From assembly GCF_030684315.1 (NCBI RefSeq), contig NC_081369.1, positions 2,160,689-2,224,688 on the forward strand: 64,000 nucleotides of DNA, in the 5' to 3' direction. A model generated the notes under the pieces. That model worked only from the letters and a program-made list of their open reading frames with translations. It did no database searches and had not been told where the DNA came from. Position numbers and translations under genes: made by a program. Source of the stretch: Stegostoma tigrinum. Its lineage: Eukaryota. Numbering within the stretch: the first letter of the stretch is position 1; each line of letters opens with the position of its first letter. Of the stretch, positions 5,167 to 52,245 are shown one piece after another.

Positions 5167-5477
5167 GTCAGTCTGCTCTCACGAAATGCACTTGAAATCT
5201 TTCAGATTGCTAATACTCTGAGGATGTTCAAAATATGTTGAAATGAACCAGCAGATCAAATTGGACTGGTTGGACTGTGTTTTTCCTTTCATTGTATTCT
5301 AAAGTAGATTATCGATCCGTTTCATCAATAATTTATGAATGCAGAATGGAATCTTTGAATATGTACTGTAGTTACGTACACCCGTACATGTGTTACACTA
5401 CTGCTAAAATGAAACACACAGTCACTATTATGACAGGATTATCAGCCCAGTTTTTGTTCCATGTTTTCGTGTCATGA

Positions 5478-27282: not shown

Positions 27283-27328
27283 ATGTTGGTGCTACCCTGG
27301 CTATTGGCTATGGAGGTTATTTACACAG
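27283..27328 (+). CDS. Gene A exon 1, signal peptide MLVLPWLLAMEVIYT(D)
   Basis: ATG followed by 15 mostly hydrophobic codons, then ACAG|GTATTT donor in phase 1, matching the phase-1 V exon acceptor. The 46-nt size is typical of IgSF leader exons. Confidence 0.65.
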
Positions 27329-30300
27329 GTATTTTCATTTGTTATGTTGTTGAGAGAAAAAATGCAACAGATGTTGAGAATCTATTTTTAATTCCAATTT
27401 TGTGTTTAAAACATTTTTGGTTATTGTTGAATGTATTTTCACTCGGAATTGCTATGCAAGATCTGAGATTAAAATGTGAGGATAAATGTAAGATTATGTC
27501 ATGAAATGTAAGATTCTGATAAATGACACCAGCACAATGAGATGGTAAGAACACCAAAGTGTTTTTCAACAAAGGATCGCGCCAGCTCCTTGATCAAAAC
27601 TGTTTGCATACTGTGCTTATGTCTGAGGATATTGTGGAGGTTTTACAGGCAAAATTATTAATTGTCTTTCCAAAATGCTGCATTAGCCTCACAGTTTCAT
27701 TTGACTGATGTGAAAAGTGAGCATGTCATAGAGTCATGGATTCATACATCACAGAAACAGATCGGTCCAACCAGTCTTTGCTGAACATAATCCCAAATTA
27801 AGGTAATCACACCTGCTTGCTCCTGGCCCATATCCCTCCACAACTTCCTATCATGTACTTATACAAATGCCTTTTAAACATTGTCATTGTACCCACTTCC
27901 ACCACTTCCTCAACAAATTAATTCCTCATGCAAACCACTGTAAAAAATTTGTCCCTTATGTATTTTTTAAATCTCTCACTTCTCACCTTAGTGTCCCTGA
28001 GTCTTGAAATTCCTTATCTTAGGGAAATGACAGTTACCATAAACTCTATCTACACCCCTCATTATTTTGTAAACTTCTATAAGGTTGCCTCACAACTTCG
28101 TACCCTCCAGTGAAAAGAGTCACAGCCTCTCCAGAGTTATAGGAACTGCAGATGCTGGAGAATCTGAGATAACAGGGTGTTGAGCCTTTCCAGCCTTTCT
28201 TTATAACTCAAACTTTCCACACCAGCAACATCCTAGTAAATCTCTTCTGAACACTTTCCATCTTAATAATATCCTTCCTGTAACTGGGCAACCAGGATTG
28301 GACACAGCATTCAAGACGAGGCCTCACCAATGTCCTGTCAAACCTCAACATGACTACCCAACTCAAAGACCTGAAGGTAAGCATGCTAAAAGCCTTTTTA
28401 ATCACCCTGTGTCTGTGTGGTACCTGCTGTAACTATACTCTTACAAGACAATTGCGGATGTCATTTTTGAAGAATTTTTTTGTGATAAATCTTAGTAAGT
28501 GCACAGCAATATAGTTTGCATGAACATGTCAGTGGATGTAAGTTGTGCACAAAGAGGCACACAGTTGAAACATAAAAATCAGGGCTTCAGTCGCAACAAT
28601 AACCAGGCTGATAAATATAATGTTATATAGACGCAAAGATTGTGATGACATTGATAAGAATAACCACATGGGAGTGCATATCTAGGATGTTCAACTGTGC
28701 AAAGCTATGATCTAGTTCATCTGACCACGAGTGCACTAAGATTATTTCTAAATTAATTTGCGTGTTAGGATATATGAAGGAGCTAATTCAACAATAAAAC
28801 CGAATGCAAAGCAATTCAAAGGCTTACCTGGGTGGCAGCAGCAACATGCCATTTGATATGCTCTTTCTCAAATGTACTCAACCTGATCACCTCGGTATAT
28901 GCAATTTAAAATGCATCATTATGTTCTGGGCTTCAGAAATGTTCGGTTTTAAGAATTACACGATATCGTATTGCGTGGCAATTGCATAATGGCATGGCAG
29001 ATATGAACTGTTAAAATAAAGTTGTTTTAGACAGCATATTTAGTGCTGGTAGTATTCAATTGCACTCAATTAATGCTCAAAGTATGTATTTGATCATCAG
29101 GAAACATTCCATAATCAACAAGTCAATGACAATTGCTGCATGATTTTTGGCTTCAGCATCACTAATTGCCGTTGCATTTATTTGGTTGCTGTCGATACAG
29201 ATGCTCAGATAAGGGTATCCCAAACTCCCAAATATGCCAACATAATCGCGGGTGGAACCGTTCATCTCTATTGTGCATTGCCTCTTTCCAATGAACCTTC
29301 AGATGTGAGCGTCTATTGGTGGAAACTCGGAAACAATCATTTTCTGCAGTCAAATGAAGGCAACAGAACACAATTTCTTCGTTTGAGGAAGGGTGAGGCA
29401 ACTTTACAGCTGCTGAATGTCAACCATGATGATTCTGGACTTTATTACTGTGGTGTGAGACATTCTGATAATCAAATTGTAAATGGGACTGGATCACAGC
29501 TTGTTATCTATGGTAAGTGGAATGTCCGCATCAAACTATTTCACAAACACACAGAAAATATGAAACCAAGCACATGTCTTCACTGTAAGATTTTATGGTT
29601 GTTCATATTTGGGTCTTCCAAGAGTTCAATTCATACCTTTTAGAATTTAGTTAAAATTCTTATTCATTATTTAATTTAATCAAGACACAGTCTGCTTCAA
29701 TTTACTTTTGAAATGAACAGGAACTAAATACAATATTTGACAAAGTGTCACAAAGTCACATAATTGCTGGATTTAAATAAACATGGTGTATTTTAGAGAG
29801 TGCAAATTTTTCACTGCCCACTGTAAATCTGCCACTGGAATGAAAATATTGTGAAAAAATCTTTATGTGTACGGTAAGTGAAATTGAAACCTCTATCTTT
29901 CTTACAGTAGAACTTTTATTTTAACTGCAGAGTCCTCTGCAACATTCCTGGTTCCATTTTTTTCCCTTTGTATGACGATGATGCTGCTTGTATTGTCAAA
30001 CCTGAGCCTTTTTATACCCTGATGAATAATTATTTCAAAACTGTTTTTGAAATCAAGTTTAGTGCATTTCTATCAGTATTTGTAAGCCAAAAGTAAATCT
30101 AATTTTGATTAATGTGTTTGGGATACTATTTAAAACAGTAATTTAAAAAAATTGATCATGCTTATAATTTTGTTTCTATTAAACATTTATACCTGCTACA
30201 TACAAAGAATTTCAACCTATGTTTATCATTCAATTATTTTAATTGAATAGTTGAAGGTGACTTCAACATTTTCTACATACTAACATAGGAACAGAGGAGC

Positions 30301-33300: not shown

Positions 33301-36300
33301 TTACTAAGTTTACATCTCTTCTGTAACTTTTTTTTAACAGTTCCCCCACGCCAACTGCATATTGATTGCCGCAAGACTGAACAGAATGCATCGACTTATC
33401 TGGTTCTCATTTGTGAAAGTGTTGAATTTTATCCAGGGAATATAAGTATCAGGTGGTACAAGAATGGTGTGAATGTTGACGATGGAATAAACACAGTTAT
33501 AAAGCTAAGTGCAAAAGGTCTGTTTGAATGTTCCAGCACTTTTGAAGAAAAAGAACCTGTCAAAGATAAGACTTTCTACACCTGCAAATTATCTTATCTC
33601 ACAATTGAAATGACCGCCACCTACCAATTTACTTCAACCAGCAATGAAGGTACAAATATATTTTTGTAACAAATGGAAAAGAATATCTGATGAATACATA
33701 TATGTAGTTAAACAGGTTAAATCTCAGAACTAATGGAAGCAATAGGGTCACTCATTCAAATTTTACATTGAATTCCACGTCTTGATTTTGCTTCAATTCA
33801 TGCTCAGCAAATCACCAACACTGGTGAAGCCAAGAATTACTTTCTGACCTCAGTCTCCTTTGAAAGCCTTGCAGGATATACTGTGTGAAGTTTTTTAATT
33901 TAGAATTATGTGCATTACAGTGCTGTCAAGCAGAAATGGCCCATTTTTTCAAATTCACTATTGACGATGGAATATGGAGATGTGTCTAATGGTTGATGGA
34001 CAATTAGGAGTAAGATATCAAATCATTATTTTCTGATATTTTCCATGCTCTTTTAAAAACACAACAATAGCTTTTCCATCTTTAATTGAACAATAACGTG
34101 GGTTAATTCAACGTTGCAAATTTATTTTTTAACAGTTTTCTTTGTAAAGCTGGGCTGCACTGTACTTTTATTATCATCTGGAAGGATTGGTACTAATTGA
34201 GGGCTGGAATACGCCTCTTGCAATGCCATACTGAGAATAATATTACAACATGCCAGAAATAAGTGTCAGTAACAATTGTATTTTCAGCTCCAGAATGTAC
34301 CTAGTTGATTCACAAAATATGATGCGTGATCTTGAAGAAATTTCAAAACACAATTCATTGTTGAAATGATGTATCGTTGTAATGTTAAAATGCAAGCATG
34401 ACCTCTTTGAATACTGTTCAGTGCTAGTATCTCTTTTTAAATTTGCAAAATTAAAATTTTATTGTTAGCATACATGATGCATATTAATATCACATATTAA
34501 AGCAGCACTTGAAATGGGTAGAAAAATGATTAACAACATACTTGGCAGTCCTTCGAAGCATTGCAGCCCCAGAAAATTTGGATACGTTTTCAAAATAACT
34601 GCAGGAGAATTGAGAAGTGGGAATGGACAATACTGTTTTACAACATAAATCTTATTTTTGATATTCATTTTACAGGAGATGACAGCATATTTTGGTACAT
34701 AAAGGTGTACGGATCAGCAGGAGGTGGAATCTTGATTTTATTGTTGCTAATAGTAATGTGGAGGAGATATCTTTTGACATCATGTAAAGGTACAAAATAG
34801 TTCAGTTGATTTCAGTTCCAAATGCTCCTTCATGTTCATTCATTAGGGAAGAACACTTTGGAAGGCACTAAGGTACTTTGATTGAGGTAGCTGCTCTCTA
34901 AAATCAGAATATTAAATGGGAAAAGTAAGCACATCAGTTTGTCTTGGAACCACAGGTGCAGAGTAACAGAGAATTAACAAATTGTGTCTTTATCAAGATT
35001 TCATCTTGAATATAAAATAGCACTTGGGATATTTAACAAAGAGTTGGTAGCTCTTCTGGCCAATGGAAAAGAGTTATCACCCAACTGATACTGGTATATG
35101 GTTAATTTCTTTTTAATCTAGTTGCTGCAAGTGAGACCTTACTATCCCCAATGAATTTCTGCACTTTTTTTTGCTAGATGTTCAAATCATATGAATAGAC
35201 TTTTAGTCATGGGTGTGGGCATCACTGGCTAGGCCAGCATTTATTATCCATCCCTAATTGCCTAGGCTGTAGATCAGTGTTAACTACTTTGCTGTGGGCC
35301 TGGAGTCACATGTAGACTAGACTAGGTAAGGGATGGGAGATTTCCTTCCCTGAAGGACATTTGTGAACCATTGGGTTATTCTGACAATCAACACTGGTTT
35401 CACGATCATCATTAGCATCCTAAGTTCAGATATTTGTTGAATTCAAATTCCAACATCTGTCATGGCAGGGCTTGATCCCAGGCCCCCAGAATATTACCAA
35501 GGTCTCCAGATTAATAGTCTAGCAATAATACCATCAGGCCATCACTTCCCCAGTAAGCTGCGTGATTTTGAATCAACCACACTCCTGTAATTCTATATGT
35601 AGGCCAGGAAATGTAAGAAAGATAGCTTTTCTTCTACTTACTATGGATTTTCATGTAAACCAGTTACAGTCACAATCACTGGAAGTGATTTTCAATTGAA
35701 TTTAAATTGCATCACCTGTGGTGGTGGGATTTGAATCCATAGTCACAGGACGAGAGACCTCAGGATCATTAGTCCAGATACATTGCCAGTACCCGAGTAT
35801 CCCACTTCTTTGAGCAATGGAAACAACAACAATTAATTGATTGTATTATTGAACACAATGTTGTACAGTGCTTTAAGCTTGTCTGAAACTGTTGTGGACT
35901 CGTGGAGAGTCACTTCAAAATACAATTAATGTTTACTACTTAATTCCAAATATTACAGGGATAGAGAATTTCACAGACCAAGCACCACACCCTGAAGATT
36001 CGGTACGTCATTTTGTCAATCTGTTGTGCTCTGTTATGAAAAATTTAATAGTTGTGACGGTAAATATGACATGCAATGATAGATACATTTATACTTGAGG
36101 TTGAAGTATGCTGTTTCACTCCTTCGGGGAAACTCTTTGAAATATATAAACTAACTACTTACTTCAGACTTCAATGAGAAAATTCAAAACGCCATGTTTT
36201 TCGTACAGGACCTTACTGCAGTCTTTGTATGTCATTGCAACTGATCCCATCAAATAGGATGTATATACAAATTTTGATGCAGTCAGTCACAAAATTGTTG

Positions 36301-38195
36301 CTATTAATATTCAAACCTGCACATGTGTGGACCAAGACGAAGTATGTCAATTTACTCAGTTATTGATCAGCCATTATGTTAATGATGAAATTTTCCAAGA
36401 ACTCAACAATTCAAAGCCTTCAGTCAGGCATTTGCCTCAGCACTATATTGAAACAATTCTTAGGAAAGTGATCAATAACAACTTTTGTGATTGTCTCAAA
36501 GGTACAATATCTCTTCATATCCTTTTTGGTCTGTCTGCAGAGTTGGATGTGATTGTCATCTGGCTGTTTTACCTTTTACCCACCTAGGTTTATTTGCTTG
36601 ATATAATTGTAATGCAGCGAGTCATCTCAAGCAACATATCTGTATTCTCAAGCAGCATTACTTCTTGTATCACAACAGACTTTGTCCTTATTGTGCATTT
36701 CCACTCATGACCCATCCAGGCCAGCAAAACATAGAGCTTGCTCCGATCTGTGCACCAGGCTGGCCATTTTTCTTCATCACTGTCAACTCAATCATTGGGC
36801 ATAAATGATCAGATTGATTTTCAGATACTCAGTGCTGAATGCGAAACATATTCATACCATTAAATTGTGGAAATAAATAAACAATGCCTTCCTTCTCAAC
36901 TACAAATTCTGGACTTCTGCAACCAAATCCAGTTTTTTACTGGCAGCTGGATAAGACTGTCATTAAACTTGGTGCTATATTTGTGCCCATGGTGATGTCC
37001 CCAAAGAAATATTCATAGCTCATCTGCTGCTGAAGCTCTCATCCACATTTCTGTTACTTCAAGACTTTTGTCATAACCATGTTCAGACATCCAAAGTTTC
37101 ATGTTATGTGAGGTCATCCAATGCTCTGCCACCACTTGTCTTTTTTTTGATGTTTCATTGAGCCGTCACTCCTGCAAAAACTGCACCCTCCCCCCCCACT
37201 ACCCCACATCCACTCCAAATTAAGCAATAATGTGGTTTTAATTTTTCAATGCCATTCTTTATTCTTACTTAACTCTATGTCTTTGCCACTGTCCGCTTTG
37301 ATACCTTCTTCAGCCTCCAAAACGCTCTGTCTAGATTTTAATTGTTCCAACATTGATGGCTATTTGTCAGACACAAGGAGAATTATGCTCTGTCCTTGTT
37401 CTAAACTCTCTGCTTCTTCAATTTGTTTTGAATTCTATGATAGTCCTTGAACCAGTGTTTTGCACTTTGTTTTCTCACATTAGTCTCAGTATTGCCTTAT
37501 GCTCAGTCTCATATCTTGCTTCTGTGAATTGCCTTCACCAATTTTACTGTTAAAGTTACTATTTAAATGTATACTTTTGTTACCTCATGTAAGCCTCCTG
37601 CAGGTTGCAAGACAGCTGTACTTTGAATCCAAACATGAATCGTATGCAAAATGAAAATTATGATATATCCTGTCCAAATAATATTTGTTTAAATGTGTAT
37701 GTGTTTGGGAATCTTAATCTTAAAGTTTACGTTAAACTTTCCAACTCTGGTTCACCTATAGAGGTTAGAGATAACAAAGTGTAGAGCTGGATGAACACAG
37801 CAGACCAAGCAGTATCAGAGGAGCAGGAAAGCTGACATTTTGGGCCTGGACCCTTTCTGAACCCGAAACATCAGCCTTCCTGCTCTTCTGATGCTGCTTG
37901 GTCTGCCTTCTTCTTCCAACTCTACACCTTGTTATCTCAGATTCTCCAGCATCGGCAGTTCCTACTATCCTTACTGTGGAGGTTGTTCAGGTTGGTGCAC
38001 ATGCTTTTATAAACAATGTCAAAATAAATGAGTAAACCAAATAACACACATTATTTTATGTTTAATGCTTTGTGTTTAATGCAGAGGGGAGGAAATGAAC
38101 TGTCGCTTTATGCATCATTGGCTTTAACACCATCAATGAAAATGGTCAGAGCCCAATATCAAGAGGAGTTGACTGAGTATGCTCAGGTATGCTGA
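27283..38195 (+). CDS. Gene A: spliced IgSF type I membrane receptor (leader-VJ-C1-TM-cytoplasmic ITIM+ITSM), 311 aa; non-rearranging antigen-receptor-like / SIRP- or NITR-like inhibitory receptor
   Basis: Six GT-AG exons with compatible phases (1,1,1,1,0): 27283-27328, 29201-29512, 33341-33649, 34676-34789, 35959-36002, 38085-38195. Total 936 nt, open from ATG to TGA. Confidence 0.85.
27725..28410 (-). mobile_element. CR1-type LINE 3' fragment in gene A intron 1
   Basis: Minus-strand LVRPRLECCVQSW..VQKRFTRM peptide. Confidence 0.75.
29201..29512 (+). CDS. Gene A exon 2, V-set Ig domain with in-exon J-like strand
   Basis: DAQIRVSQTP...VHLYC...VYWWK...ATLQLLNVNHDDSGLYYCGV...NGTGSQLVIY. Acceptor TACAG at 29200, donor G|GTAAGT at 29513. 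Confidence 0.93.
33341..33649 (+). CDS. Gene A exon 3, C1-set Ig domain
   Basis: VPPRQL...LVLICESVEFYPGNISIRWYKNG...GLFECSS...YTCKLSY. C1 hallmarks L-x-C-x(4)-FYP and W-x-K-N-G. Polypyrimidine acceptor ttttttttaacag, donor G|GTACAA. Confidence 0.92.
34676..34789 (+). CDS. Gene A exon 4, transmembrane segment
   Basis: GDDSIFWYIKVYGSAGGGILILLLLIVMWRRYLLTSCK, a hydrophobic run followed by RR stop-transfer. Acceptor ttttacag, donor G|GTACAA, phase 1/1. Confidence 0.88.
35959..36002 (+). CDS. Gene A exon 5, short cytoplasmic exon (GIENFTDQAPHPEDS)
   Basis: ttacag acceptor and TCG|GTACGT donor. Converts phase 1 to phase 0, as needed to join the ITIM exon in frame. Confidence 0.7.
37767..37970. 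mobile_element. Miniature fold-back remnant of Penelope termini in the last intron of gene A
   Basis: gagataacaaagtgtagagctggatgaacacagc... followed by its imperfect reverse complement ...ctctacaccttgttatctc. Similar short terminal remnants lie near 6720, 9172, 9925, 10840, 14200 and 39700. Confidence 0.7.
38085..38195 (+). CDS. Gene A exon 6, terminal cytoplasmic exon with ITIM and ITSM
   Basis: tgtgtttaatgcag|AGG..., translating RGGNELSLYASLALTPSMKMVRAQYQEELTEYAQVC*. Confidence 0.85.
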   Translation, partial: RGGNELSLYASLALTPSMKMVRAQYQEELTEYAQVC

Positions 38196-38773
38196 GAAAA
38201 GAATGAAAATGCAAATAAAGGCAAGAGGGAAAATACATTATTTGTGTAATGTTACTTTGCTCATTCCACATGCTAGGTTTCTGAACCTTGACCTTTTTTT
38301 TGACTGATAAGCCAATGTGAAAGTGTGCAAATGCTAGTTACGTTTCCTAACACCTGTGTTATAGATAAAGCAAAAAAAAATTGATTGTCATCCGACATAT
38401 GCTGCACAAGAATTGTTTGGATCCAAGAAAACAGAGAAGCCTAAGTTAGAGGATAAAATATCCAACCATGGTCAGCCACCAGGGAAAACCCAAAGAGTAA
38501 CAGAAGAGACTGTCTGCAATGAAGAGGAAGCCACCTAATGTTTCCAGCCATACAAGGCATGCAGATTTCTCATGGCAAATACAATAGCATGGATTTTTGC
38601 TCTAATTATGCAGCCAGTGCTTTAAAAGACACAATGTTTTAATGAAAATGTGTTAACTGCTGTCGATTTGCTTTGTAATTTGTAACTCAACTGTCATATT
38701 CATAAAGTTGACCTGTGGCAAATGTCTGTATGAACACAATTCTTTCATGTTGCAACCAATTTTACGATCCTTG

Positions 38774-38779
38774 AATAAA
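38774..38779 (+). terminator. Candidate polyadenylation signal of gene A
   Basis: AATAAA about 580 nt after the stop, followed by a T/GT-rich tract. A more proximal AATAAA lies at 38214-38219. Confidence 0.45.
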
Positions 38780-41700: not shown

Positions 41701-42215
41701 AAAACTGCTGAACAAATGAAGAAGTGTATTCCAGGTGACTAAGAATGTAAATACATAACACCTTCCCAATTGGGACAGGTAAATAAAATGTGGAGCCATA
41801 AATAAGTGACTAAAACACAATTTGCACCGTTACTCCAACAGAAGGCAATCCACATTACATTTGCTGTTGTAGTCGGCTATGCAAAGGAGGAATTTATTTA
41901 ATAGCTGCTGCCATTTCAGCATTCCATGACTTCAGATTCCCAGCAGTGCTAATAATTTGCATTTTTCCCACAATACTTTTTGAGAATACTTTTTGCCATT
42001 TTGTTGCCATTCCATGCCAGTTTCATGCGGAAACAGCACAAAACATTCTTATGTAGTTGCTTGGACCAAATGCATTGCATAGCAATCATATTTAACAGCA
42101 AACCGGATATACCAGATAGACCAGTATGATCTTTCTTTTAAGTATCATGATATTTAAAACATTTCAAAGCCCACAGTAAGCAACATAGATTACGTTGCAC
42201 TGCTAGCGTGCAGTA

Positions 42216-42246
42216 TCACGTGACCTTTTTTATATTGGGTGTGGGT
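42216..42246 (+). promoter_or_regulatory. Candidate proximal promoter of gene B (E-box TCACGTGA, TATA-like TTTATAT, GT-box GGGTGTGGG)
   Basis: The motifs cluster about 95-125 nt upstream of the leader ATG in non-repetitive sequence. Confidence 0.4.
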
Positions 42247-42340
42247 CAGTTGGGCTAGTTGGTCAATTGAGAGTCGTGAGGCGAGAAAATAGTAGAACTT
42301 CAGTTCATTCGTTAAAAACGGATATTTTGTCTTGTTCAAA

Positions 42341-42380
42341 ATGACTGCCCTCGCTTTGCTTAAGTGTGTGGTCATCCTAG
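42341..42380 (+). CDS. Gene B exon 1, signal peptide MTALALLKCVVIL(A)
   Basis: caaaATGA start context, hydrophobic codons, CTAG|GTTTGT phase-1 donor, 124-nt intron. The signal peptide continues AFGSASS in the V exon. Confidence 0.8.
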
Positions 42381-45300
42381 GTTTGTTTCGCAGTTTCTAT
42401 TTTAAACCTTTGTGCTCACTCCTGGTTGACTACATCCCTGTCAAATGCAAGTCAGGTCCAGCATTTTATTAATGGATTTTACCTTTCTGTTCTTTCTTTG
42501 AAAGCTTTTGGCTCCGCCAGCTCCCAGGTGTTACAAAGGCCCCAACGCATGGCTGTGAATTTGGGTTCAAATATAAGTATCTTTTGCGAGTTCAGTCTTC
42601 TGTCAGATGACTCAGAAGCGAATATTTTCTGGTGGAGACTTGGCGACAGTGTACTTGAGCATCCTAACTCTGACTCGAGAAGACAATATTTTAAGAGAAA
42701 AGGACAAGGCACATTCAAGATCTTTGACATCGGTCTTCAAGATGCTGGTGTTTATTACTGTGGAGTCCAACAACAAAGTGATATTGTTATTAACGGGACT
42801 GGGACAACACTTGTTGTCCATGGTGAGTTTCATTGTAGCTGTTGCAATTGATGAGAATTCTTCCAAGTTCATTGAATTACTTGAAATGTTTGACATCAGG
42901 TTAATGTGATTTGTGTCTGACGTAAGTATGTTCGTGAGCCTTTCGAATCTCGTCTCTTGCCCATTTATTTTCAATATTCCTTATAAGGTATAAGGGATAT
43001 GTTTTCTTCACAGAATTGATAATGACCAGTCATTAATCAGTGAACCTATTTAAACCTATTTGTATTACTGCAACTCTGACTAGGTTGTTAAGATTACTAA
43101 ATCATTGGAGACTAGTGTAAAATGTTCAATTTGAGTGATGTTGAACCCATTACCATCATTCATATATACACATATCTAATTTCATATGAATAAGTTCTCT
43201 ATTCTGTTCTAATTTCTATACAATTTGGCAATTCTAAAGGTTAATAGTTTGATATTTTGAAACTTTATTGTAGAGTCGCAACAAAATACTTGAACTCTTA
43301 AAAATATTGAAGCCAAAGATGTTTGTCATAAAATGTATGCTTACAGATATAACTGCCCATTTTATATACTATTGCCCTAATTATGCAACTTCCAGAAAAT
43401 GGTTACAGTACTTTGCAATACAAAAGTGAGTTGGGAGAAGAATAATTGTTCAAACACGTAAATAGATGTTTCATTAATCAGTTTATATAGTGAATACATT
43501 CACAGTTCACAGTGGCACGGTAGTGGAGCTTGTGGCAAATTTTCTTGGAATAATTATGAACAGAATTCAGGCTGATTTTCCATAATGCCATAAAATCAAA
43601 TATCTGACAAGCCTTCATTGAATAAACAAATAGCTGTTTATGGTCATTTATAGTTCTAGCTTTTTTTTAATATGTTGACCTTCCCCCAAAATTTCAAATT
43701 GAGCAAGGAAACTTCCATATCTTATCAGGCCCACTATTCCAGAAATATTCCAACATTTAACTGATGGACTTGGGTTGCTCTTTTACTTCAGCTGTTGGGA
43801 TGACTACTGTGTTATACCAGTTCATTTGAGTTGGGAAAACAACCAATTCATGTTTATCCTTTTGGTGGTAAATTATTCCACAGCATATTTGGAAAGGAAG
43901 TATAATATTAAAACTGGAAAAAAAAACTGTGGATGCTGTAAAACAGGAACAAAAACAGAAGTTGCTGGTAAGAGCTCAGCAAGTTTGGCAGCATCTGTGA
44001 AGAAAAAATCAGATGTAATGTTTTCGGTCCTTCTGAGGAGGGGTAACTTCTGTTTTAGTTCTTCAAGTATATTGGCTGACATTCCTCTCTTAATCTGTAG
44101 GACATTGGTGAGACCACATCTGAAACAGTAAACAGATGAATGCATCTCATTGTTATTTTATTTGACACTTGAATCATGAATATCTGTTTTAATTCTATGA
44201 AATACTATGAAATCTGTTCTATGAATCAAAATGCCATAATGGCATTGATATATGGGGCCATATGAAACAGAAGAAAAAGTAAAATTTGTTTTTTTCGAGG
44301 CTGCTCCACAATTCAATATGATCATGGCAGATATATTTGTATTTTGAATAGCGCGTTCTCACCCACTCCCGATGATATTTGATTCCAATGTTTGATAAGA
44401 ATCTACTTATCTCTGTTGAAAAAAACTCCTGATCAAACGCCACCACCTTTAGAGACAAACCTCAAAGACCTAACAGAGAAGGAAATAATCTCCTCAGGTT
44501 GGCCGTAAAGAGTGAGACCTAATTTTAGAACAGCATCCTCTCGATCTGGCTGATCCAGAAGACGAAGCATCGTTTCCATGTCCATCTTGTCAAGACCATT
44601 CAGGATCAAATAAATTTCAATCATGTCATCCTTCACTCTTCTAAACTCCAGTGGAAACAATTCCAGCTTGTCAAGTCTATTCTCTTTATTTCTCTTATTG
44701 AATATTATCATTAACTTGTCGACATATTTGCAGAATGGTGATGATGACCACTCTTTGTTCTTTATTCCTCTTCTGACTTAGCTACTAATGCTTTGCTCCT
44801 TGGGACATTCCTTGTTGGTTCTACCTACCTTTCTGCAGCTACCTCTTTATGTTTGAATGTTATTGTTCCACCATAAGGCCAAATAGCCTGCGACAACACT
44901 TTAGGGATTCTATGAGCCTTGTGATAGAATCCTAGCCTTAGCCATAACCAATAATCATTTATACTGCCCTATCTCTCCTTTTCCTTTCCTGACTGTATTT
45001 CTTAATTTTTGTTGCAGTCATTGTGGACAACAACAATACGGCCCATTACTTCAGCCGCATGCTGTTACACTGGTGGCTCAATTACAGCCCCAGCATGGAT
45101 GCCATGAATCTGAATTAGTTTTTAGTCATTTTCAGTCCCAAATTGGAAACTGCAGTAAAGATTATGATCACTATGACTTTTGGATGAATTCAGTGCAAAG
45201 CCCTTACTAGTGAACCCTGTCTTTCAGCACCTCCTGTACATAGCATTCTTTCAGATCCTTTGATGCTGAATGAAACTGCCCTTGCACCCCCTTTCAGCAG

Positions 45301-48300
45301 TAAATATGGATGGTAAATAAAGGATACTCATCTATTTTTCAGCTTCAGTTCAAAATGAGTGCCCTGATCACAGTGCAAGATTATTGTGGTCACTCCTAAT
45401 GACTGACCACAGGAGTCTCAAGTATAGAATTTTGATTGTTTATTCAAACATATACAGGCAGAGTGTCCACTCAAATGAAAACTCTACTGTCCACAAGAAA
45501 TTCATGAATTCGTAAATTTTAGTCAAGTCCACAAATTCTACCCTTGTCAAAACACAGAACGCAATAAACAGATCTTTCTACTTCTCACCTATAATGTTTT
45601 CTTCAATACTGATCAGTTGATTCTATTCCCTACTTTTGCCTTCTAATCAATTAATCCTTCATGGGTCCCAAAGCTTTCAGGAATATCCCTGCTGTTCTCA
45701 GCCATACTGGTGTTCAAGGCTTATCTGGAAAAGTATTTGTTCAAATGTACTGTGAACATAGAGATCAGTATTTCACATTTTAAGTCCAGATAACTCTCTG
45801 AAATTGGCTATACATGATATGCCTTTGTCAAAACCATACTGACTCTTCCCAGTTAGCTTCTGATTTTCAAAATGAACAATATTTCAAAATATTATCTCTT
45901 TAATGATCGATTCTACAGTTTTACACATCATAGTCACAATGTAAATTCCCTTTAGTTTATTGTTTTCTTCCTCCTTCCTTCATGGAATAGAATGGTTGTG
46001 TCTATTATTTTACAATCTGATGAAACCTTTCTTGAATCTATAGCGTTTTAGAAAATTAGCCCCGATACATCAATCAGTTCATTTACAAGTTCTTTTAGGA
46101 TGAACTTTATCTGGACTCCAGACAGGCCAGATTTGATTAATACAACTTCTTGCATGATTGTAATTTGCTGAATTCATCAAGCCCTTCCATTTCCTGAATT
46201 ATAGCTATTACTGAAATGTATTTTGCACTCTGTGCAGTGAACACAAAGCAAAATATCTGTTCTTGTCAATGCAATTTCATCACTATCTACAATCAACACT
46301 TCATTTTCATTCTCTAGAGAACCAAGATTGACTTTGCTGACTCTTTTCCTTGTTAAATACACTTAGATGCCCTTGCTCTCCATTGTTGCATTGCTATATA
46401 GCTTCCTCTCAGACTCTAATTTCTCTTGGAGATCCTCTGGCGTTCTTTATATGCTGACTAATAATTTAGCCTGGTGCTCATCGTTGGGCAATTGTGTGTG
46501 TTTTGCTTACATTTGATGTTTTCCCTCACTTCTTTAAATAACCATGGATGATGGGTCTTCTCTTTTAGGATCTTTCTTTGTCATGGGAAAATACTTATTC
46601 TGAGTTCTCAGAAACATCTACTTTAATGCTTGTTAATCTGTCTACAGTGATATATCCTCTAGCCTAATATGCCAGTAAACTTCTGCTCACCCAAGATAAT
46701 TCACCATATTGGAGACGTTATCATATTTAACATTGTGAGGAACTGCTCGATGAATGTTGTTGTTTCATAAGTGCTCTTTTAATTACTTGGTTTCCACCAT
46801 CTTAAATTTAAAAATTTAAAATGAAGTATAAGATGTAGTCATTGCATTCTTCTTCTTTTCTGTATATAATAATCAAAAATTTCAACATTGAACAATTTTA
46901 CTTAAACCCCATTATAGCTCCACCGTCTCCTCCAACTATACTATCCAAAATGTCAGATGAGAATTCAAGCATCTATCTGCACCTCATATGTGAAGCAGTT
47001 GATTTTTACCCAGAGGCCATTATCTTCAATTGGTACAAGAATGCTAGAAAGATTACAAATGGAATTAAAACTACACAATACTTGAACTCAGAGGGACTCT
47101 ATCAAGCATCCAATATTCTGCAAGAGTTACAACCAATCCAGGAAGGAAGTTCTTATATTTGTTTGATATTGCATAGCACCCTCCAGGCTCCAAAGTTATC
47201 CACTTACACGGTGTCTAGTTCTAATCAAGGTAAGATGTAACTTTATTTTTGTAAAAATCATTCGGCTGGCTTTTGCTGAGAAATATCACTGTGGCTGGGA
47301 ATTGTCATTTATTGGGAAATTAGGTACTGATGTCTGGGGTCTGCTTGTGGGTATGTAAGCAAGAAATGTAAAAATCATCTCCTCCATATGCTATTGGATA
47401 ACTCACAGTGTTTCATCAGACATGAAATTGCTGTGCATCCTGTGTTAGATACGTGTGACAGTATTTGAAGTATTGCTGTTTAATGAGACTTTCTAAGCAG
47501 AATAGCTACTGACGCTTGAGAGAATAATTTCATGCAAAGAGAAAAATACTCATGAAGAGTTTTCAGTCAACACTGCTAAGTGATCAAGCTGTAGAGAAAG
47601 GAGAAAAAAAATAGGGTTTGATCAACAAGCTGTGGTCTGACAAATTATGTTGATAACATTTCAACATTGCCTTGCATGTTGAGTGGTAAGCTTGATCAGT
47701 AATAAGATCAGCACAAATGAGTATTTTGTTGCATGTAAATGAACACTTTGAAAACTCATGCAAACATGTTTAAAATGTACAAAAATGTACATAATTAATT
47801 CAGTAAGATGATATAAGTTAACTTTGAATCAGTGGAATAGACTCCATTAGATTGACACATCCATATCACAAAGGTAGATGGTCAACTCTGTTGGGTCCCA
47901 AACATTAGTATCAAGACATCACCACAAGATTTGAAACTGCAGTTTGCTAAATCCAACTATCTTCAGTTACTTCATTAATGATCTTCACTTCTTCCTAATG
48001 TCAGAAATGGAGATACTTGCTGGTGATTGGACAAAGTTGGCATCATTGAGGCTCCTGAGATACTGAAGCAGTCCACTTCCATATGCAGGAACCCTCTACG
48101 ACATTCAAGTTTGAGCTTATAAGTGGCAGTTAACTCCACAGAAATGCCGGAAAGTGACCAATTTCAAAAACAGCAACTCTGGTTAGCTCCCCTTGAAGTT
48201 CTAAGATTTTATTAATGATTAGTCCACCACTTTCAACATTCTGGGGCTTACCACTGTCTTTGAACTGCACTAGACCAGGCACATAAGTATTGCGGCCACA

Positions 48301-51083
48301 AGAACAAGTAAGAATATAGATATCTGTGGCATGTAACTCACCCTATATCTTCCAAATCCCTACAATGCTGTTCCAAGTCAGAGCATTGTTCTGTGCTGGC
48401 ACAATGCCGACAATTTTTAACCAACTGGACAATATTGATGACAAAGCCAATGACGTTTCCTTGGCACACAATCCATCACATTCAATATTGATTTCCTTTA
48501 CTACTAACTCACACCACTGTTGTGGGTGATATCCGCAAGGTGCATTCCTGAATTCTGCAAAGCTTCCTATGTCAGATCATACTACTGTGCAATCCACAAT
48601 GAAGAATAAGAAAGATAGGACTCCCATTAAATCACCAGCATCTCCAATCTAGTCACACACTATCCTTGGGACTTGGAATACTATCATTGTTTCAAGCATT
48701 CAAGCAAAGAAGTTGCTATTTTAGTCTGTAGCTTAAATGGAGGAATGGTAAATCTTTCCAGTTGTATTTTCGTCTAGATTTTCATGATCACTATTATATG
48801 AAGGGAATGTTTTACATTAGCATGTAAATACAATCTTGCCATTTAGGCCATAATTTACAACTGCTTGTTCTGGGATAAGAAGCCCAGTTGTCTCTCATGT
48901 GACAGTTGCATTGGAATTGCTTGGTCAAGCAAGGAGTCCATGAATATTTCATGCCACTGTATTGATTGGTATAAAGTTATTGGAGAAACTCATAACTGCA
49001 TAGTGATAAAGCAATGACATTTTCTAATTTATATATGCAATCTTGTGGACTGAGCATGACATACACCCGCTAATGTGAGAAAACAAAATGAGCATTATTT
49101 GACCCACACAAGAAATACAGAGGAATTCCCATTGATCCTGTGGGATTAGAATGAAAACCAAACCACAGAAAGGTGTTTTGAAGGATGTGTTCTTTTCAGT
49201 TGCTCAGTGATGCCAGCAAAAATTGACAACAAACTGTGAACATGATCCTTTGCCAGTTCATTTTAAATCTACCCAGACGCAGGCATCTCCAGACCTATTC
49301 TCGAGCACAGTTTTGAAATACTCGAGTGAAAACAGTTTCAGGCACTTTTTTTTCACTCTTCTCTAGTTGAGTTTGAAATCTTTGGAGGTGCATAACTGTT
49401 TACATATTTCTAAAAGCAGCTTACCTTTCAATTTTAATTGGAACAATGTTTGAATAACAAACATGCACTTAATGAAAAAGAGTTTAATTTCATGAAGCGA
49501 AAAATTAACTTCAGCAACTTTTCAATGTTTCAATCATAATTACAGACATCTCATCAGCCAATGCTTGATAAAATTTCCCAGAATTCAGAGTTAAATTTTA
49601 AATAGGTTTAGGTGCAACATGGTGCTAATATGACCAAATTCTGCTCAGAACCATTCTTTACTCATTTCACATGATAACAAACAGAATGCATTTGAAAACA
49701 TTTCTAAATGCTGGCATTTCACCAATTTTCAAGCTTTAGGACATAGAACAGTTTAGCATAGGAATGGGCCCTTTGGCCCATGATGTTGTGCCAAACTTGA
49801 GCCCCTGGATGGCTTTATACAGCAATGCTCTTCAGGGTCCTGCCATTAACTGCATACTTATCCTTAACATTTGATCTCCCGAAGTGCAGCACGTCATCAT
49901 TACCCAGATTAAACTTCATCCGCCATTTCTCCACCCATATCTGCAAATGATCTATATCCTGCTATATCCTTCGACACTATCCAAAACTCTACCAATCTAT
50001 GTATCATCTGCAAACTTACTAACTCATCAAAATCATTTATGTAAATAGTAAACAGCAGAGGTCCCATTATGGATCCCTATGGAACACCTCTAGCCAGAGA
50101 AACACACTTCCATCATTACCCTCTGCCTTCCATGGGCAAGCCAATTCTGAATCCAAGCAGCAAAGCAACAGTGAATCCCATGCATCTTAATCTTCTAGAT
50201 GAGCCTACCATGAGGGGCTTTGTAGGAAGCCTTCCTAAAATTCATGTGGACAGCTTCCACCTCTTACCTTCATTACCACCTTTGACATATTCTTGAAAAA
50301 TTCAGTTGAATTAGTAAGTCATATCCTGCCCCTCATAAAACCACACTGTCTGTCCCTAATTAGGTCATGTTTTTACAAATGCATGTCAGTCCTATCCCTA
50401 ACAAGCCTCACCAATAGCTTTCCGACCACTGATGTGAGACTCATCGGTCTATAGTTTTCTCGATTGACCCTATTTTCCTTCTTGAACAAAGGAACAGTTC
50501 ACTACTCGTCAGTCGTGTGGGATCTCTCCCATAGCTAATGAGATGCAAGGCATTGTTAGCATTTTTACTATTGCATATTAAATTTTAAATCACTTGGGTA
50601 TGTAACTTCAAAACAAAACTTATTAAAAAAACCAACACCATTGTATTGTAATAGTAATGCTGTTAAATTATTTGTAAAATTCATACAGTACAAAGTCTGG
50701 AATAGAATTTGTAGCATTATGTTAGTTATACTATAGAATTGAATCAGTAACTTGTATCATAATAATTTATAACTGGCCATTCATTTATTGATAAATTTAT
50801 TTTTTGAGATAATCTAGAAAATTCTGCAGTTTAATTTTGTGCTATTTACATCTTGCAGTTCCCAAAATTGGCTTATTAATCCAATTTATATTGGTCATTT
50901 TTCTAATCCTGATTTTGGCCTTCATCCTCATGGATTACTGTAAAGCAATGCATTTCAGAAGGTAAGAATCTACTGAATGAAGTGAAAAATTGTGCCCTTG
51001 TGGAACAACTGAGAAAAATTGAAAGTAACTTGTATATTTCTTGCAGCATGCATAACTTAAACAAACCGTACAGGGACCAATAA
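42341..51083 (+). CDS. Gene B: spliced IgSF type I membrane receptor (leader-VJ-C1-TM-short tail), 269 aa; paralog of gene A
   Basis: Exons 42341-42380, 42505-42822, 46918-47229, 50859-50961, 51047-51083. Phases 1,1,1,2 are compatible and 810 nt are open from ATG to TAA. The terminal exon is the least certain. Confidence 0.83.
42505..42822 (+). CDS. Gene B exon 2, V-set Ig domain with in-exon J-like strand
   Basis: SQVLQRP...ISIFC...IFWWR...FKIFDIGLQDAGVYYCGV...INGTGTTLVVH. Acceptor ttctttctttgaaag, donor G|GTGAGT. Confidence 0.93.
44220..44700 (-). mobile_element. Old CR1-type LINE fragment in gene B intron 2
   Basis: RLDKLELFPLEFRRVKDDMIEIY peptide. Confidence 0.6.
46918..47229 (+). CDS. 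Gene B exon 3, C1-set Ig domain
   Basis: APPSPP...LHLICEAVDFYPEAIIFNWYKN...GLYQASN...YICLILHSTL. Shows the FYP, WYKN and Y-x-C-x-x-x-H C1 motifs. Donor G|GTAAGA. Confidence 0.93.
49740..50550 (-). mobile_element. CR1-type LINE fragment in gene B intron 3
   Basis: Reverse-orientation CR1 tail (acatagaacag...) and RT-like sequence. Confidence 0.65.
50859..50961 (+). CDS. Gene B exon 4, transmembrane segment
   Basis: tcttgcag| VPKIGLLIQFILVIFLILILAFILMDYCKAMHFR, donor AG|GTAAGA (phase 2). Confidence 0.85.
51047..51083 (+). CDS. Gene B exon 5, short terminal tail (S)MHNLNKPYRDQ*
   Basis: 85-nt intron with acceptor atttcttgcag. Reading from phase 2 reaches TAA at 51081-51083, which overlaps AATAAA at 51079-51084. 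Confidence 0.55.
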
Positions 51084-51556: not shown

Positions 51557-52245
51557 GAAACATAGAACATAGAACAGTACAGCACAGAACAGGCCCTTCA
51601 GCCCACAATGTTGTGCCGACCATTGATCCTCATGTATGTACCCTCAAATTTCTGTGACCATATACATGTCCAGCAGTCTCTTAAATGACCCCAATGACCT
51701 TGCTTCCACAACTGCTGCTGGCAACGCATTCCATGCTCTCACAACTCTGCGTAAAGAACCTGCCTCTGACATCCCCTCTATACTTTCCACCAACCAGCTT
51801 AAAACTATGACCCCTCGTGCTAGCCATTTCTGCCCTGGGAAATAGTCTCTGGCTATCAACTCTATCTATGCCTCTCATTATCTTGTATACCTCAATTAGG
51901 TCCCCTCTCCTCCTCCTTTTCTCCAATGAAAAGAGACCGAGCTCAGTCAACCTCTCTTCATAAGATAAGCCCTCCAGTCCAGGCAGCATCCTGGTAAACT
52001 TCCTCTGAACCCTCTCCAAAGCATCCACATCTTTCCTATAATAGGGCGCCCAGAACTGGACGCAGTATTCCAAGTGCGGTCTAACCAAAGTTTTATAGAG
52101 CTGCAACAAGATCTCACGACTCTTAAACTCAATCCCCCTGTTAATGAAAGCCAAATCACCATATGCTTTCTTAACAACCCTATCCACTTGGTTGGCCATT
52201 TTAAGGGATCTATGTATCTGCACACCAAGATCCCTCTGTTCCTCC
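51557..52245 (-). mobile_element. Young CR1-type LINE 3' end
   Basis: ORF 51681-52256 (-) QRDLGVQ..LVRPHLEYCVQFW..RGDLIEVYKIM and a (CATAGAA)n tail. Confidence 0.9.

What the first reader, a model, noticed from the sequence alone, without database searches (positions are those of the whole stretch)
27283..51083. Tandem pair of non-rearranging, TCR-chain-like V(J)-C1-TM receptor genes
Seen: two intact spliced genes, each leader / V with a J-like G-T-G-x-x-L-V strand fused in the same exon / one C1-set domain (FYP, WYKN) / TM / tail. No RSS, separate D/J segments or hinge cysteine are evident. Established: C1-set domains are largely confined to jawed-vertebrate immune proteins (Ig, TCR, MHC, beta2m, tapasin, SIRP), and a germline VJ-C1-TM protein is the hypothesised pre-RAG ancestor of antigen receptors. 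Inference: this is a family of innate, antigen-receptor-shaped receptors. It may relate to SIRP, NKp30, NITR or described non-rearranging antigen-receptor-like genes (UrIg, PRARP), or be new. The ORF track shows only scattered exons.
Basis: partly seen in the sequence, partly recalled or inferred. Interest (0 to 1): 0.92.

Follow-up and report, generated by a model that had tools for sequence, protein, structure and literature searches.

The report
Shark SIRP-like VJ-C1 receptor gene pair
These are two real, non-rearranging shark genes for membrane receptors with one antibody-like variable domain and one constant domain; they belong to a large, misnamed shark, ray and chimaera gene family whose closest known relatives are the SIRP inhibitory/activating immune receptors, so they are interesting but not a new kind of antigen receptor.

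Summary
The + strand carries two spliced genes, each with a split leader, a VJ-type V exon, a C1-set exon and a TM exon. All splice sites are AG/GT and the Ig exons are phase 1. No RSS is found anywhere in the window. Transcript-like contigs of a closely related species cover gene A's exons only and show the V-to-C1 and C1-to-TM junctions.

Corrections: gene A extends through two cytoplasmic exons, to a stop at 38536-38538. It needs one small exon between 34790 and 38084 that I could not locate. Gene B has a different TM type and a short tail.

Identity: both are diverged members (31-35% identical to each other) of a multigene family found in sharks, rays and chimaera. Pipelines name its members SIRP-alpha-like, Ig-lambda-like, tapasin-related-like, NCR3LG1-like or CD276.

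The family profile aligns collinearly with sauropsid SIRP-alpha from V to tail, skipping one C1 (E 7e-25). The four-tyrosine tails align alone (E 4e-10; shuffles score far lower).

Best reading: gene A is an ITIM/ITSM inhibitory receptor and gene B is a short-tailed counterpart, as in SIRP-alpha/beta. I found no evidence of TCR-like pairing.

Membership in PRARP could not be tested. This scan noted the same family earlier, elsewhere in this genome.

The parts
27283..27328 (+). Gene A exon 1: first part of the split leader (MLVLPWLLAMEVIYT, plus 1 nt)
   Evidence: ATG followed by donor CAG|gtatttt. P0008 residues 1-25 align here. A related-species transcript contig carries 47 nt upstream of the V exon start (record 1).
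29201..29512 (+). Gene A exon 2: end of the leader plus a VJ-type V domain. The G strand reads NGTGSQLVIY, with an N-glycosylation sequon in place of the J-motif Phe.
   Evidence: Pfam V-set E 4.6e-10. Family V HMM 133 bits. AF2 pLDDT 90.7, with a split G strand and no C'' strand. Transcript contigs run 29198-29510.
33341..33649 (+). Gene A exon 3: C1-set domain (EFYP, RWYKNG, YTCKLSY). It has two extra cysteines, at 33367-33369 and 33529-33531.
   Evidence: tblastn with gene B's C1 gives E 5e-21. Family C1 HMM 123 bits. Transcript joints 29510->33340 and 33647->34677.
34676..34789 (+). Gene A exon 4: connecting peptide, uncharged TM (GGGILILLLLIVMW) and juxtamembrane RRYLLTSCK. The donor is in phase 1.
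   Evidence: hhalign against the family gives prob 94.6%, E 6.6e-08. A transcript contig runs 34677-34790 and continues 390 nt downstream.
34790..38084 (+). Intron that must hold at least one small cytoplasmic exon (length 2 mod 3; about 44 nt by analogy with P0008 residues 275-289). Not located.
   Evidence: Phase bookkeeping. An HMM scan of all ORF fragments found nothing.
38085..38186 (+). Gene A cytoplasmic exon: ITIM (LSLYASL) and ITSM (TEYAQ|I)
   Evidence: 34 family proteins hit it by tblastn. hhalign against the family tail gives E 7e-08 with 57% identity to P0008. AG/GT borders.
38365..38538 (+). Gene A last coding exon. The third motif is degenerate (HPTYAAQEL), followed by GSKKTEKPK. 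The fourth and fifth tyrosines of the family are lost. Stop TAA at 38536-38538.
   Evidence: P0008 residues 322-377 align at 45% identity. 45 family proteins hit it. hhalign E 2.2e-05.
42341..42380 (+). Gene B exon 1: first part of the split leader (MTALALLKCVVIL, plus 1 nt)
   Evidence: ATG and donor G|gtttg. There is no RNA evidence.
42505..42822 (+). Gene B exon 2: VJ-type V domain (G strand NGTGTTLVVH)
   Evidence: Pfam V-set E 9.4e-08. Family V HMM 120 bits. The nearest relatives are P0043, P0037, P0168 and P0188, in a clade with 98% support.
46918..47229 (+). Gene B exon 3: C1-set domain (DFYP, NWYKNA, YICLILH)
   Evidence: Pfam C1-set E 1.4e-11. AF2 pLDDT 87.2; the top structural matches are all C1-set domains. 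It is 65-66% identical to P0043.
50859..50965 (+). Gene B exon 4: 'type-2' TM (PKIGLLIQFILVIFLILILAFILMDY) and a short tail. Stop at 50963-50965. An alternative donor at 50961 would join to 51047-51083.
   Evidence: It is the only strongly hydrophobic ORF downstream of the C1 exon. AG/GT borders. hhalign against the short-tail TMs of six family members scores 28.5, E 5.8e-06; shuffles reach at most 17.8. No ITIM-type exon lies downstream in the window.

Best explanation
The window holds two neighbouring, long-diverged members of a multigene family of non-rearranging VJ-C1 transmembrane receptors. The family is found across cartilaginous fish and is the closest counterpart there of the SIRP family.

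Gene A is an inhibitory receptor. Its compact V domain binds a ligand, and one C1 domain acts as a stalk. Its TM is uncharged, and its tail carries one ITIM and one ITSM. Once phosphorylated, these motifs would recruit SHP-type phosphatases, as in SIRP-alpha (inferred).

Gene B has a different ectodomain lineage. It carries the family's alternative TM type and a very short tail. It therefore either signals through an adaptor or acts as a signal-less or decoy counterpart, as in the SIRP-beta/gamma logic (inferred).

Shown here: the gene structures, the domain types, the absence of RSS, splicing of gene A's orthologue in a relative, family membership, and collinear similarity of the family to SIRP-alpha including the tail.

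Inferred: the ligand, the phosphatase or adaptor coupling, and the cell type.
For: Domains and exons. No RSS. Splice joints in transcript-like contigs of a relative, which are absent from the DNA run.

Family:
- The best single-V hits to gene A's V exon, and every VJ-C1 hit whose source I looked up, are chondrichthyan proteins of about 230-490 aa. They carry the same NGTG...L.V, FYP and WYK motifs.
- Many paralogues sit on one chromosome per species.
- P0008 is collinear with all recognised gene A exons.
- The C1 and V trees put gene A with shark and ray sequences (97% support) and gene B with P0043/P0037/P0168/P0188 (98-99% support).

Link to SIRP:
- hhalign of the family against 16 sauropsid SIRP-alpha sequences gives E 6.7e-25 over 305 columns. 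It runs V-d1, C1-d2/d3, TM, and tail.
- Tails alone score 57, E 4e-10, over 88 columns. Sixty column shuffles reach at most 16.3.
- Single SIRP-alpha tails score 42-50. Other ITIM tails of reptile VJ receptors score 16-24.
- SIRP-alpha d3 is the best single C1 match among the five top PDB hits printed domain by domain, at 50 bits.

Gene A's tail exons match the family tail. Gene B's TM matches the family's short-tail TM type. The family switched between ITIM and short tails at least 8 times on the C1 tree, as paired-receptor families do.
Against: - There is only one C1 domain, whereas SIRPs have two.
- In the V tree the one snake SIRP V lies outside the family. The nearest non-shark V domains are reptile multi-VJ proteins and Xenopus NCR3-like V domains.
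- Gene A's tail exons alone do not align significantly to SIRP-alpha, so the link is transitive through the family.
- Gene A keeps only two good tyrosine motifs, and one of its exons is unlocated.
- Gene B replaces the Arg conserved in the family's short-tail TM with Gln. Adaptor coupling is therefore doubtful.
- Gene B has no RNA evidence.
- No synteny with the tetrapod SIRP locus, no CD47 binding and no phosphatase binding was tested.
- No Ig, TCR, PRARP or UrIg sequences were available for a joint tree.
Confidence: 0.72

Rival explanations
1. [quoted passage not shown] 2019 (J Immunol 202:1992). From memory, that paper describes a closely linked pair of non-rearranging VJ-C genes in birds, reptiles and amphibians. 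On this reading they are not SIRP relatives, or PRARP and this family are the same lineage.
For: The architecture is the same (VJ, one C domain, TM). The arrangement as a linked pair resembles what I recall of PRARP. PRARP is listed with SIRP, NKp30 and CD79 among joined-VJ genes (PMC11599192; PMC10751288). An earlier follow-up in this scan proposed this reading.
Against: No PRARP sequence or paper was available. No bird, reptile or amphibian VJ-C1-TM protein of this family appeared in the HMMER search of 1.84 billion representatives (top 150 hits) or in two word-based searches. The tail is specifically SIRP-alpha-like.
Confidence: 0.12
2. A and B are partner chains of one heterodimeric, TCR-like germline receptor.
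For: The two genes are adjacent, on the same strand and diverged, like TCR or Ig chain pairs. C1 domains usually pair with another C1 domain.
Against: There is no membrane-proximal cysteine, and gene A's TM has no charged residue. Gene A has its own ITIM/ITSM tail. Each ectodomain lineage occurs with both tail types in other species, which fits independent receptors. The closest known family (SIRP) does not need a partner chain.
Confidence: 0.06
3. One or both genes are decaying copies (pseudogenes) in a birth-and-death family.
For: Gene A lacks a recognisable exon needed for frame continuity and has lost the last two or three tyrosine motifs. Gene B has Gln at the conserved TM Arg position and no RNA evidence. 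The surroundings are full of retroelements.
Against: All recognised exons are open and have intact splice sites. The orthologue of gene A in a relative is transcribed and spliced, and its contig continues 390 nt past the TM exon. The unaligned segment of P0008 (15 aa) is a poorly conserved linker that would escape homology searches.
Confidence: 0.08
4. They are germline-joined Ig light-chain or TCR genes, or B7/NCR3LG1-type ligands, as some automatic names suggest.
For: Family members are auto-named 'Ig lambda-1 light chain-like', 'NCR3LG1-like' and 'CD276 homolog'. Lambda and kappa V-C units score 67-69 bits against the family profile, slightly above SIRP d1-d2 at 59 bits.
Against: The genes have a TM exon and an ITIM/ITSM tail. 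The V domain lacks the C'' strand. There are no RSS and no V/J/C segments nearby. B7-type V domains lack the GxG J-like strand, and none is in the top 50 structural matches of the V model. The tail is homologous to the SIRP-alpha tail.
Confidence: 0.02

Closest known systems
SIRP family (SIRP-alpha/PTPNS1/SHPS-1, SIRP-beta, SIRP-gamma)
   Same: Both have a non-rearranging V domain with a J-like G strand, followed by C1-set domain(s), a TM and a tail. The inhibitory members have a four-tyrosine tail with the same order and similar spacing (ITIM ... KK.P ... xEYAx ... ITIM ... xEYAx). Both have short-tailed counterparts with a basic residue at or in the TM. Both are multigene clusters. Profile-profile alignment is collinear over the whole length.
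   Different: This family has one C1 domain instead of two. Its V domain is compact and has no C'' strand. The J-motif Phe is replaced by an N-G-T sequon that is nearly invariant in the family. The family is much larger and turns over fast (orthologue-level identity is only about 50-65% between shark orders). Its V domain does not group with the one snake SIRP V. The ligand is unknown.
PRARP (Fu et al. 2019)
   Same: Both are non-rearranging VJ plus a single C domain, membrane-bound, and described as closely linked gene pairs (from memory and from citations in PMC10751288 and PMC11599192).
   Different: The comparison could not be made, because neither the sequences nor the paper was available. 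No tetrapod protein of this architecture surfaced in my searches.
UrIg / UrIg2 (Flajnik et al. 2023, 2025; PMC12227049)
   Same: Both are elasmobranch, non-rearranging, and have a single-exon VJ with a split leader and C1-type domains. UrIg2 V-C1-C2-C3 (9dmx) is the second-best PDB hit of the family profile.
   Different: UrIg has three C1 domains and is secreted. UrIg2 has 9-11 C domains and disulfide-linked V domains. Neither paper text mentions an ITIM tail for them. Per domain, UrIg2 scores below SIRP-alpha and IgL (53.6 bits for V-C1, 30-39 bits for single C domains).
NKp30 (NCR3) and the Xenopus/reptile multi-VJ receptors
   Same: The V domains are the nearest non-shark relatives of this family's V in my sample. 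Both have a glycosylated G-x-G J-like strand. NKp30 is among the structural matches (Z 13.1, tied with many others).
   Different: They have no C1 domain. The sequon sits two residues later (G-N-G-T rather than N-G-T-G). Their ITIM tails are not collinear with this family's tail.

Membership tests
SIRP family | N-terminal V-set domain encoded with its J-like G strand in one exon, non-rearranging | tested here: met
   Pfam V-set. NGTGxxLxV lies in the same exon. No RSS. hhalign of V_A against SIRP d1 gives prob 93%, E 3.8e-07.
SIRP family | Two membrane-proximal C1-set domains (d2, d3) | tested here: not met
   There is only one C1 exon per gene. The family-SIRP alignment skips one C1 domain. 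A few family models have two C1 domains (P0048, P0132, P0159), but these two genes do not.
SIRP family | SIRP-alpha-type cytoplasmic tail: four tyrosine motifs forming ITIMs | tested here: met
   This is met at family level. Tail-to-tail hhalign scores 57, E 4e-10, over 88 columns; shuffles reach at most 16.3. Other ITIM tails score 16-24. Gene A itself keeps an ITIM, an ITSM and one degenerate motif. Its exons alone are not significant against SIRP.
SIRP family | Activating/short-tailed counterpart with a basic TM residue that binds DAP12 (SIRP-beta) | tested here: inconclusive
   Gene B has a short tail and the family's alternative TM. However, the Arg conserved in that TM type is Gln in gene B, and the only Lys sits at the outer boundary. 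No adaptor binding was tested.
SIRP family | Orthology by phylogeny and by synteny with the tetrapod SIRP locus | tested here: inconclusive
   The V tree does not join the family to the snake SIRP V. The C1 tree has SIRP d2 and d3 on very long branches.
SIRP family | Binding of CD47; recruitment of SHP-1/SHP-2 | not testable with these tools
   This needs binding assays.
PRARP | Sequence relatedness to the chicken PRARP pair | not testable with these tools
Rearranging antigen receptors (Ig/TCR), incl. germline-joined shark IgL | RSS-flanked or germline-joined V(D)J within an Ig/TCR cluster; a C region without its own ITIM tail; TCR-type charged TM or secreted/Ig-type end | tested here: not met
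   There is no RSS and no other V, J or C segment in the 64 kb. Gene A has an uncharged TM and an ITIM/ITSM tail.
UrIg/UrIg2 | VJ followed by three or more C1 domains; disulfide-linked homodimer | tested here: not met
   There is one C1 exon and no membrane-proximal cysteine. UrIg features are taken from PMC12227049.

The most novel reading that the evidence does not exclude
The family is the SIRP lineage in its ancestral two-domain form (VJ-C1-TM-ITIM), kept only by cartilaginous fish. On this reading, a germline receptor with exactly the architecture postulated for the pre-RAG antigen-receptor precursor still exists. It would exist as a large, fast-evolving paired inhibitory/short-tail family that could be studied functionally for ligands, polymorphism and cell type.
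Probability: 0.25. Interest if true: 0.7.

Novelty: new variant of a known kind. Interest (0 to 1): 0.45.

Why it matters
SIRPs, NKp30, PRARP and UrIg are the main exhibits in the debate on which germline VJ(-C1) gene the RAG transposon split. A SIRP-like family with a single C1 domain is present in sharks, rays and chimaera. That would push the SIRP-type inhibitory tail and the VJ-C1 membrane architecture back to the gnathostome root.

The family would also give shark immunology a candidate paired-receptor system analogous to SIRP, KIR, LILR or NITR.

On the practical side, dozens of RefSeq models carry five or more contradictory names (SIRP-alpha-like, Ig lambda-like, tapasin-related-like, NCR3LG1-like, CD276). 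These could be unified under one family.

The two genes in this window are ordinary members of that family, not a unique locus.

Tried and rejected
- **Complex prediction:** I ran gene A's C1 exon against gene B's. It returned no verdict (score 0.00). That counts neither for nor against pairing.
- **Gene A's missing exon:** an HMM scan of all ORF fragments in 34790-38084 gave nothing above noise. An alternative donor or acceptor cannot fix the phase.
- **ITIM-type exons for gene B:** tblastn with 85 family C-termini found none downstream of gene B's C1 exon.
- **Gene A's tail exons against SIRP-alpha, one at a time:** not significant.
- **Structure searches:** VIA-align gives ties. The V model matches NCAM Ig1, IgNAR V, TCR V-beta and CD79b at Z 13.7-15.0. 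The C1 model matches MHC II, IgG, UrIg2 and IgNAR C domains at Z 13.0-13.7. These confirm the fold classes but do not discriminate between families.
- **ESM Atlas look-alikes:** only generic Ig clusters.
- **Literature:** searches for UrIg, PRARP, SIRP with shark, NKp30 with shark, and ITIM with shark found no description of this family. The PRARP paper and the first UrIg paper are not held.
- **Joined exons:** All searches and folds of window sequence were done exon by exon, by reference. Full-length comparisons used database relatives (P0008, P0043 and others) as proxies.
- **Gene B expression:** not tested, because the single read-laying run went to gene A.
Full report
**What is in the sequence**

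On the + strand between 27283 and 50965 there are two genes with the same plan. Pfam calls the two large ORFs at 29140-29640 and 42426-42848 V-set (E 4.6e-10 and 9.4e-08). It calls the ORF at 46842-47237 C1-set (E 1.4e-11). tblastn with these exons finds one more C1 exon at about 33340-33650. It also shows that the two genes are only 31% (V) and 35% (C1) identical.

HMMs built from the family score these four exons at 120-133 bits. Nothing else in the six-frame translation of the 64 kb scores above 7 bits. There are therefore exactly two V and two C1 exons, and they are far above chance.

Reading the borders gives these models.

Gene A:
- leader 27283-27328
- VJ 29201-29512
- C1 33341-33649
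- connecting peptide and TM 34676-34789
- cytoplasmic exon 38085-38186
- last exon 38365-38538

Gene B:
- leader 42341-42380
- VJ 42505-42822
- C1 46918-47229
- TM and short tail 50859-50965, with a possible alternative splice from 50961 to 51047-51083

All borders are AG/GT, and the leader, V, C1 and TM exons are in phase 1. The leader is split as in Ig/TCR genes. The J-like strand (NGTGSQLVIY in gene A, NGTGTTLVVH in gene B) lies in the V exon itself.

A scan for heptamer-12/23-nonamer signals found none on either strand. No cysteine lies between the C1 domain and the membrane.

**Transcript evidence**

No run on record as RNA holds the V exon of gene A. Two runs of a related organism (coded A; kind guessed as RNA) hold part of it.

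Laid on 29150-34850, their contigs are about 94% identical. They cover the three exons and an intronic repeat block only, with zero depth in unique intron sequence. They carry joints 29510->33340 and 33647->34677. These are the predicted V-to-C1 and C1-to-TM junctions, to within the 1-2 nt blurred by substitutions.

One contig starts 47 nt upstream of the V exon, in sequence that does not lie on the stretch (the leader). Another continues 390 nt beyond the TM exon. A run of organism B (100% identical, evidently genomic DNA) covers everything continuously and has none of these joints.

So the orthologue of gene A is transcribed and spliced as modelled in a close relative. Gene B and this species' own RNA were not tested.

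**Open points in the models**

Gene A's TM exon ends in phase 1, and the exon at 38085 starts in phase 0. A small exon (length 2 mod 3) must therefore lie in 34790-38084.

The Heptranchias relative P0008 is collinear with every recognised gene A exon. It has 15 unaligned residues exactly there. That linker is not conserved in the family, and my HMM scan did not find the exon.

Gene B's 3' end is predicted only.

**What family they belong to**

A HMMER search of 1.84 billion representatives with gene A's V exon returns three kinds of hit:
- giant multi-Ig proteins;
- many proteins of 230-490 aa that match over the whole V domain at up to 53% identity;
- some reptile, Xenopus and gar multi-V proteins.

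Every VJ-C1 hit whose source I looked up comes from a cartilaginous fish. The species include Heptranchias, Heterodontus, Carcharodon, Cetorhinus, Mustelus, Scyliorhinus, Chiloscyllium, Hemiscyllium, Pristiophorus, Mobula, Hemitrygon, Hypanus, Pristis, Narcine, Amblyraja, Leucoraja and the chimaera Callorhinchus.

The pipelines name these proteins 'tyrosine-protein phosphatase non-receptor type substrate 1-like', 'SIRP beta-1-like', 'Ig lambda-1 light chain-like', 'tapasin-related protein-like', 'NCR3 ligand 1-like' or 'CD276 homolog'. In each species many paralogues sit on one chromosome. For example, about twenty Heterodontus models lie on the 99.65-Mb record and nine Heptranchias models on the 66.5-Mb record.

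The family shares these features:
- VYWWK.GE and DSGVYYC in the V domain;
- a nearly invariant N-G-T-G-S/T-x-L-x-V strand, that is, an N-glycosylation sequon where the J motif has Phe;
- VPPTPL, FYP, TWYKNG, GLYE.SS and YTC.VSH in the C1 domain.

In separate C1 and V trees, gene A falls with Heptranchias, Pristis, Mobula and Hemitrygon sequences (97% support in the C1 tree). Gene B falls with Mustelus, Scyliorhinus, Heptranchias and Pristiophorus sequences (98-99% support in both trees). The two genes thus represent two old sub-lineages. Gene A's sub-lineage predates the shark-ray split. They are not a recent duplicate pair.

**Tails and membrane anchors**

The family has two anchor types.

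Type 1 has an uncharged TM (...GCAGGGL.FLLL..IIGK.C) and a tail with up to four or five tyrosine motifs. Gene A has this type:
- LSLYASL fits the ITIM consensus.
- TEYAQ|I fits the ITSM consensus.
- The third motif is degenerate (HPTYAAQEL).
- The later tyrosines are lost.

Type 2 has a conserved Arg near the outer end of the TM, D/E-H at the inner end, and a tail of about 10-20 residues. Gene B's exon at 50859 matches this type (score 28.5, E 5.8e-06; shuffles reach at most 17.8). It has Gln at the Arg position and a Lys six residues upstream.

Of 92 family models, 36 have a TM plus an ITIM-type tail and 14 have a TM plus a short tail. The C1 tree needs at least 8 switches between these two states. 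Relatives of gene B's ectodomain carry ITIM tails (P0043, P0168, P0188). Relatives of gene A's ectodomain carry short tails (P0013, P0022, P0012). This is the pattern of paired inhibitory/activating receptor families.

**Comparison with known families**

Against PDB sequences, the family profile ranks UrIg2 (9dmx) second and SIRP-alpha (2wng) fifth of more than 10,000 hits. Per unit:

| Target unit | Bits |
|---|---|
| Lambda V-C | 69 |
| Kappa V-C | 67 |
| SIRP-alpha d1-d2 | 59 |
| UrIg2 V-C1 | 54 |
| SIRP-alpha d3 (single C1) | 50 |
| UrIg2 single C domains | 30-39 |
| IgG CH3 | about 29 |

I then fetched genuine SIRP-alpha sequences of crocodilians, birds, snakes and lizards and aligned 16 of them.

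hhalign of the shark family against this alignment gives probability 99.6% and E 6.7e-25. It forms one collinear path: V to d1, the single C1 to the first half of d2 and the second half of d3, TM to TM, the KGK juxtamembrane, and the tail.

The tails alone align over 88 columns with score 57 and E 4e-10. Sixty column-shuffled controls score at most 16.3. Single SIRP-alpha tails score 42-50. The ITIM tails of the reptile VJ receptors, which have the most similar V domains, score 16-24.

The shared pattern is ITIM-(x)KK(S/T)P...-xxYAx-...-(L/V)TYA(A/D)LD-...KxxKP...-(T/S)EYA(E/S), with similar spacing.

Ig, TCR and UrIg chains do not have such tails as far as I know. This is therefore the most discriminating character I could test, and it points to SIRP.

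**Differences from SIRP**

- There is one C1 domain, not two.
- The V domain is compact. The AlphaFold model (pLDDT 90.7) has strands A, A', B, C, D, E, F and a split G, but essentially no C' or C'' strand. Its best structural matches are I-set NCAM domains, IgNAR V, TCR V-beta and CD79b, all tied.
- The V tree puts the family (94% support) next to turtle two-V proteins. Beyond these lies a reptile/Xenopus NCR3-like group. The one snake SIRP V lies further out. That sample was chosen by similarity to gene A, so it is biased.

The C1 model (pLDDT 87.2) is a standard C1-set fold. Its best matches are MHC II, IgG, UrIg2, IgNAR and light-chain constant domains, all tied.

**Mechanism**

Shown: gene A encodes a type I membrane protein with a VJ domain, a C1 domain, an uncharged TM and ITIM plus ITSM motifs.

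Inferred from the established behaviour of ITIM/ITSM receptors, and from the tail's homology to SIRP-alpha: ligand engagement leads to tyrosine phosphorylation and recruitment of SHP-type phosphatases, which damps activation.

Gene B has no signalling motif. Its TM type carries a conserved Arg in other members, which suggests coupling to an ITAM adaptor there. Gene B's Gln makes that uncertain for this particular copy. It may be a decoy or adhesion-type member, as SIRP-gamma is.

I see no support for an A-B heterodimer. A complex prediction of the two C1 domains gave no verdict (not evidence either way).

**Literature and novelty**

UrIg is VJ plus three C1 domains and is secreted. UrIg2 is VJ plus 9-11 C domains (PMC12227049). 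Both are clearly different from these genes.

PRARP (Fu et al. 2019) is cited as a joined-VJ, MHC-linked gene (PMC10751288, PMC11599192). The paper is not held, so PRARP membership is untested.

I found no paper that describes this cartilaginous-fish family. Most subscription journals are outside the library, however.

The same family has been noted several times in this scan, elsewhere in this genome. One further gene lies about 18 kb beyond this window's end. I treated those notes as leads and tested the SIRP-like reading myself.

**Verdict**

These are non-rearranging VJ-C1-TM receptors, but they are best described as two members of a SIRP-like paired-receptor family of cartilaginous fish. 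They are a single-C1 variant of a known kind, not TCR-like chains or a demonstrated antigen-receptor ancestor.

**Constraints**

Window sequence was searched and folded exon by exon, by reference.

Noticed in passing
window 33367-33369 and 33529-33531: Gene A's C1 domain has two cysteines beyond the canonical pair: HIDC in the A-strand region, and FEC where the family has YEV/YEA. They lie on strands that are not neighbours in a C1 fold, so they may be free or interchain.
   Followed up: no
window 50859-50965; family proteins P0022, P0013, P0165, P0187, P0075, P0085: The family's short-tail members share a distinct TM. It has a conserved Arg near the outer face (P/H-R-F/L-I/V-L) and D/E-H at the inner face. 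Gene B has Gln instead of that Arg.
   Followed up: partly
window 25098-26307 (also 2572-5871, 54927-55522, 61700-62360): These are copies of a retroelement with a GIY-YIG-like endonuclease ORF (Pfam PF01541, E 8e-04, below the Pfam cut-off). They are flanked by inverted duplicates of the same ORF (25098-25454 on + and 25920-26288 on -), which looks Penelope-like.
   Followed up: partly
window 12611-13009 (-), 19301-19687 (+), 51681-52256 (-), 307-639 (+): These are LINE-type reverse-transcriptase fragments (RVT_1, E 1.8e-11 for 12611-13006) and repeated C-terminal ORF pieces. One copy lies just downstream of gene B.
   Followed up: partly
window 30296-31250 and 31633-31823 (intron between V and C1 of gene A): Summed contig depth here reaches about 2,500 in the DNA run (about 5 elsewhere), and there are many internal joints in all runs. 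This is a high-copy repeat that also appears in the transcript-like runs.
   Followed up: no
proteins P0010, P0041, P0062, P0144, P0127, P0097, P0120 (not in the window): Turtles, a gecko and a viper have receptors made of 2-5 tandem VJ-type V domains with ITIM tails. Pipelines name them 'pIgR-like', 'titin-like' or 'CD22-like'. Together with Xenopus NCR3-like proteins they are the nearest non-shark relatives of this family's V domain.
   Followed up: partly
proteins P0048, P0132, P0159 (two C1) and P0155, P0107 (two or three V): Some family models contain duplicated C1 or V domains. Either domain number varies within the family or neighbouring genes have been fused by the gene predictor.
   Followed up: no
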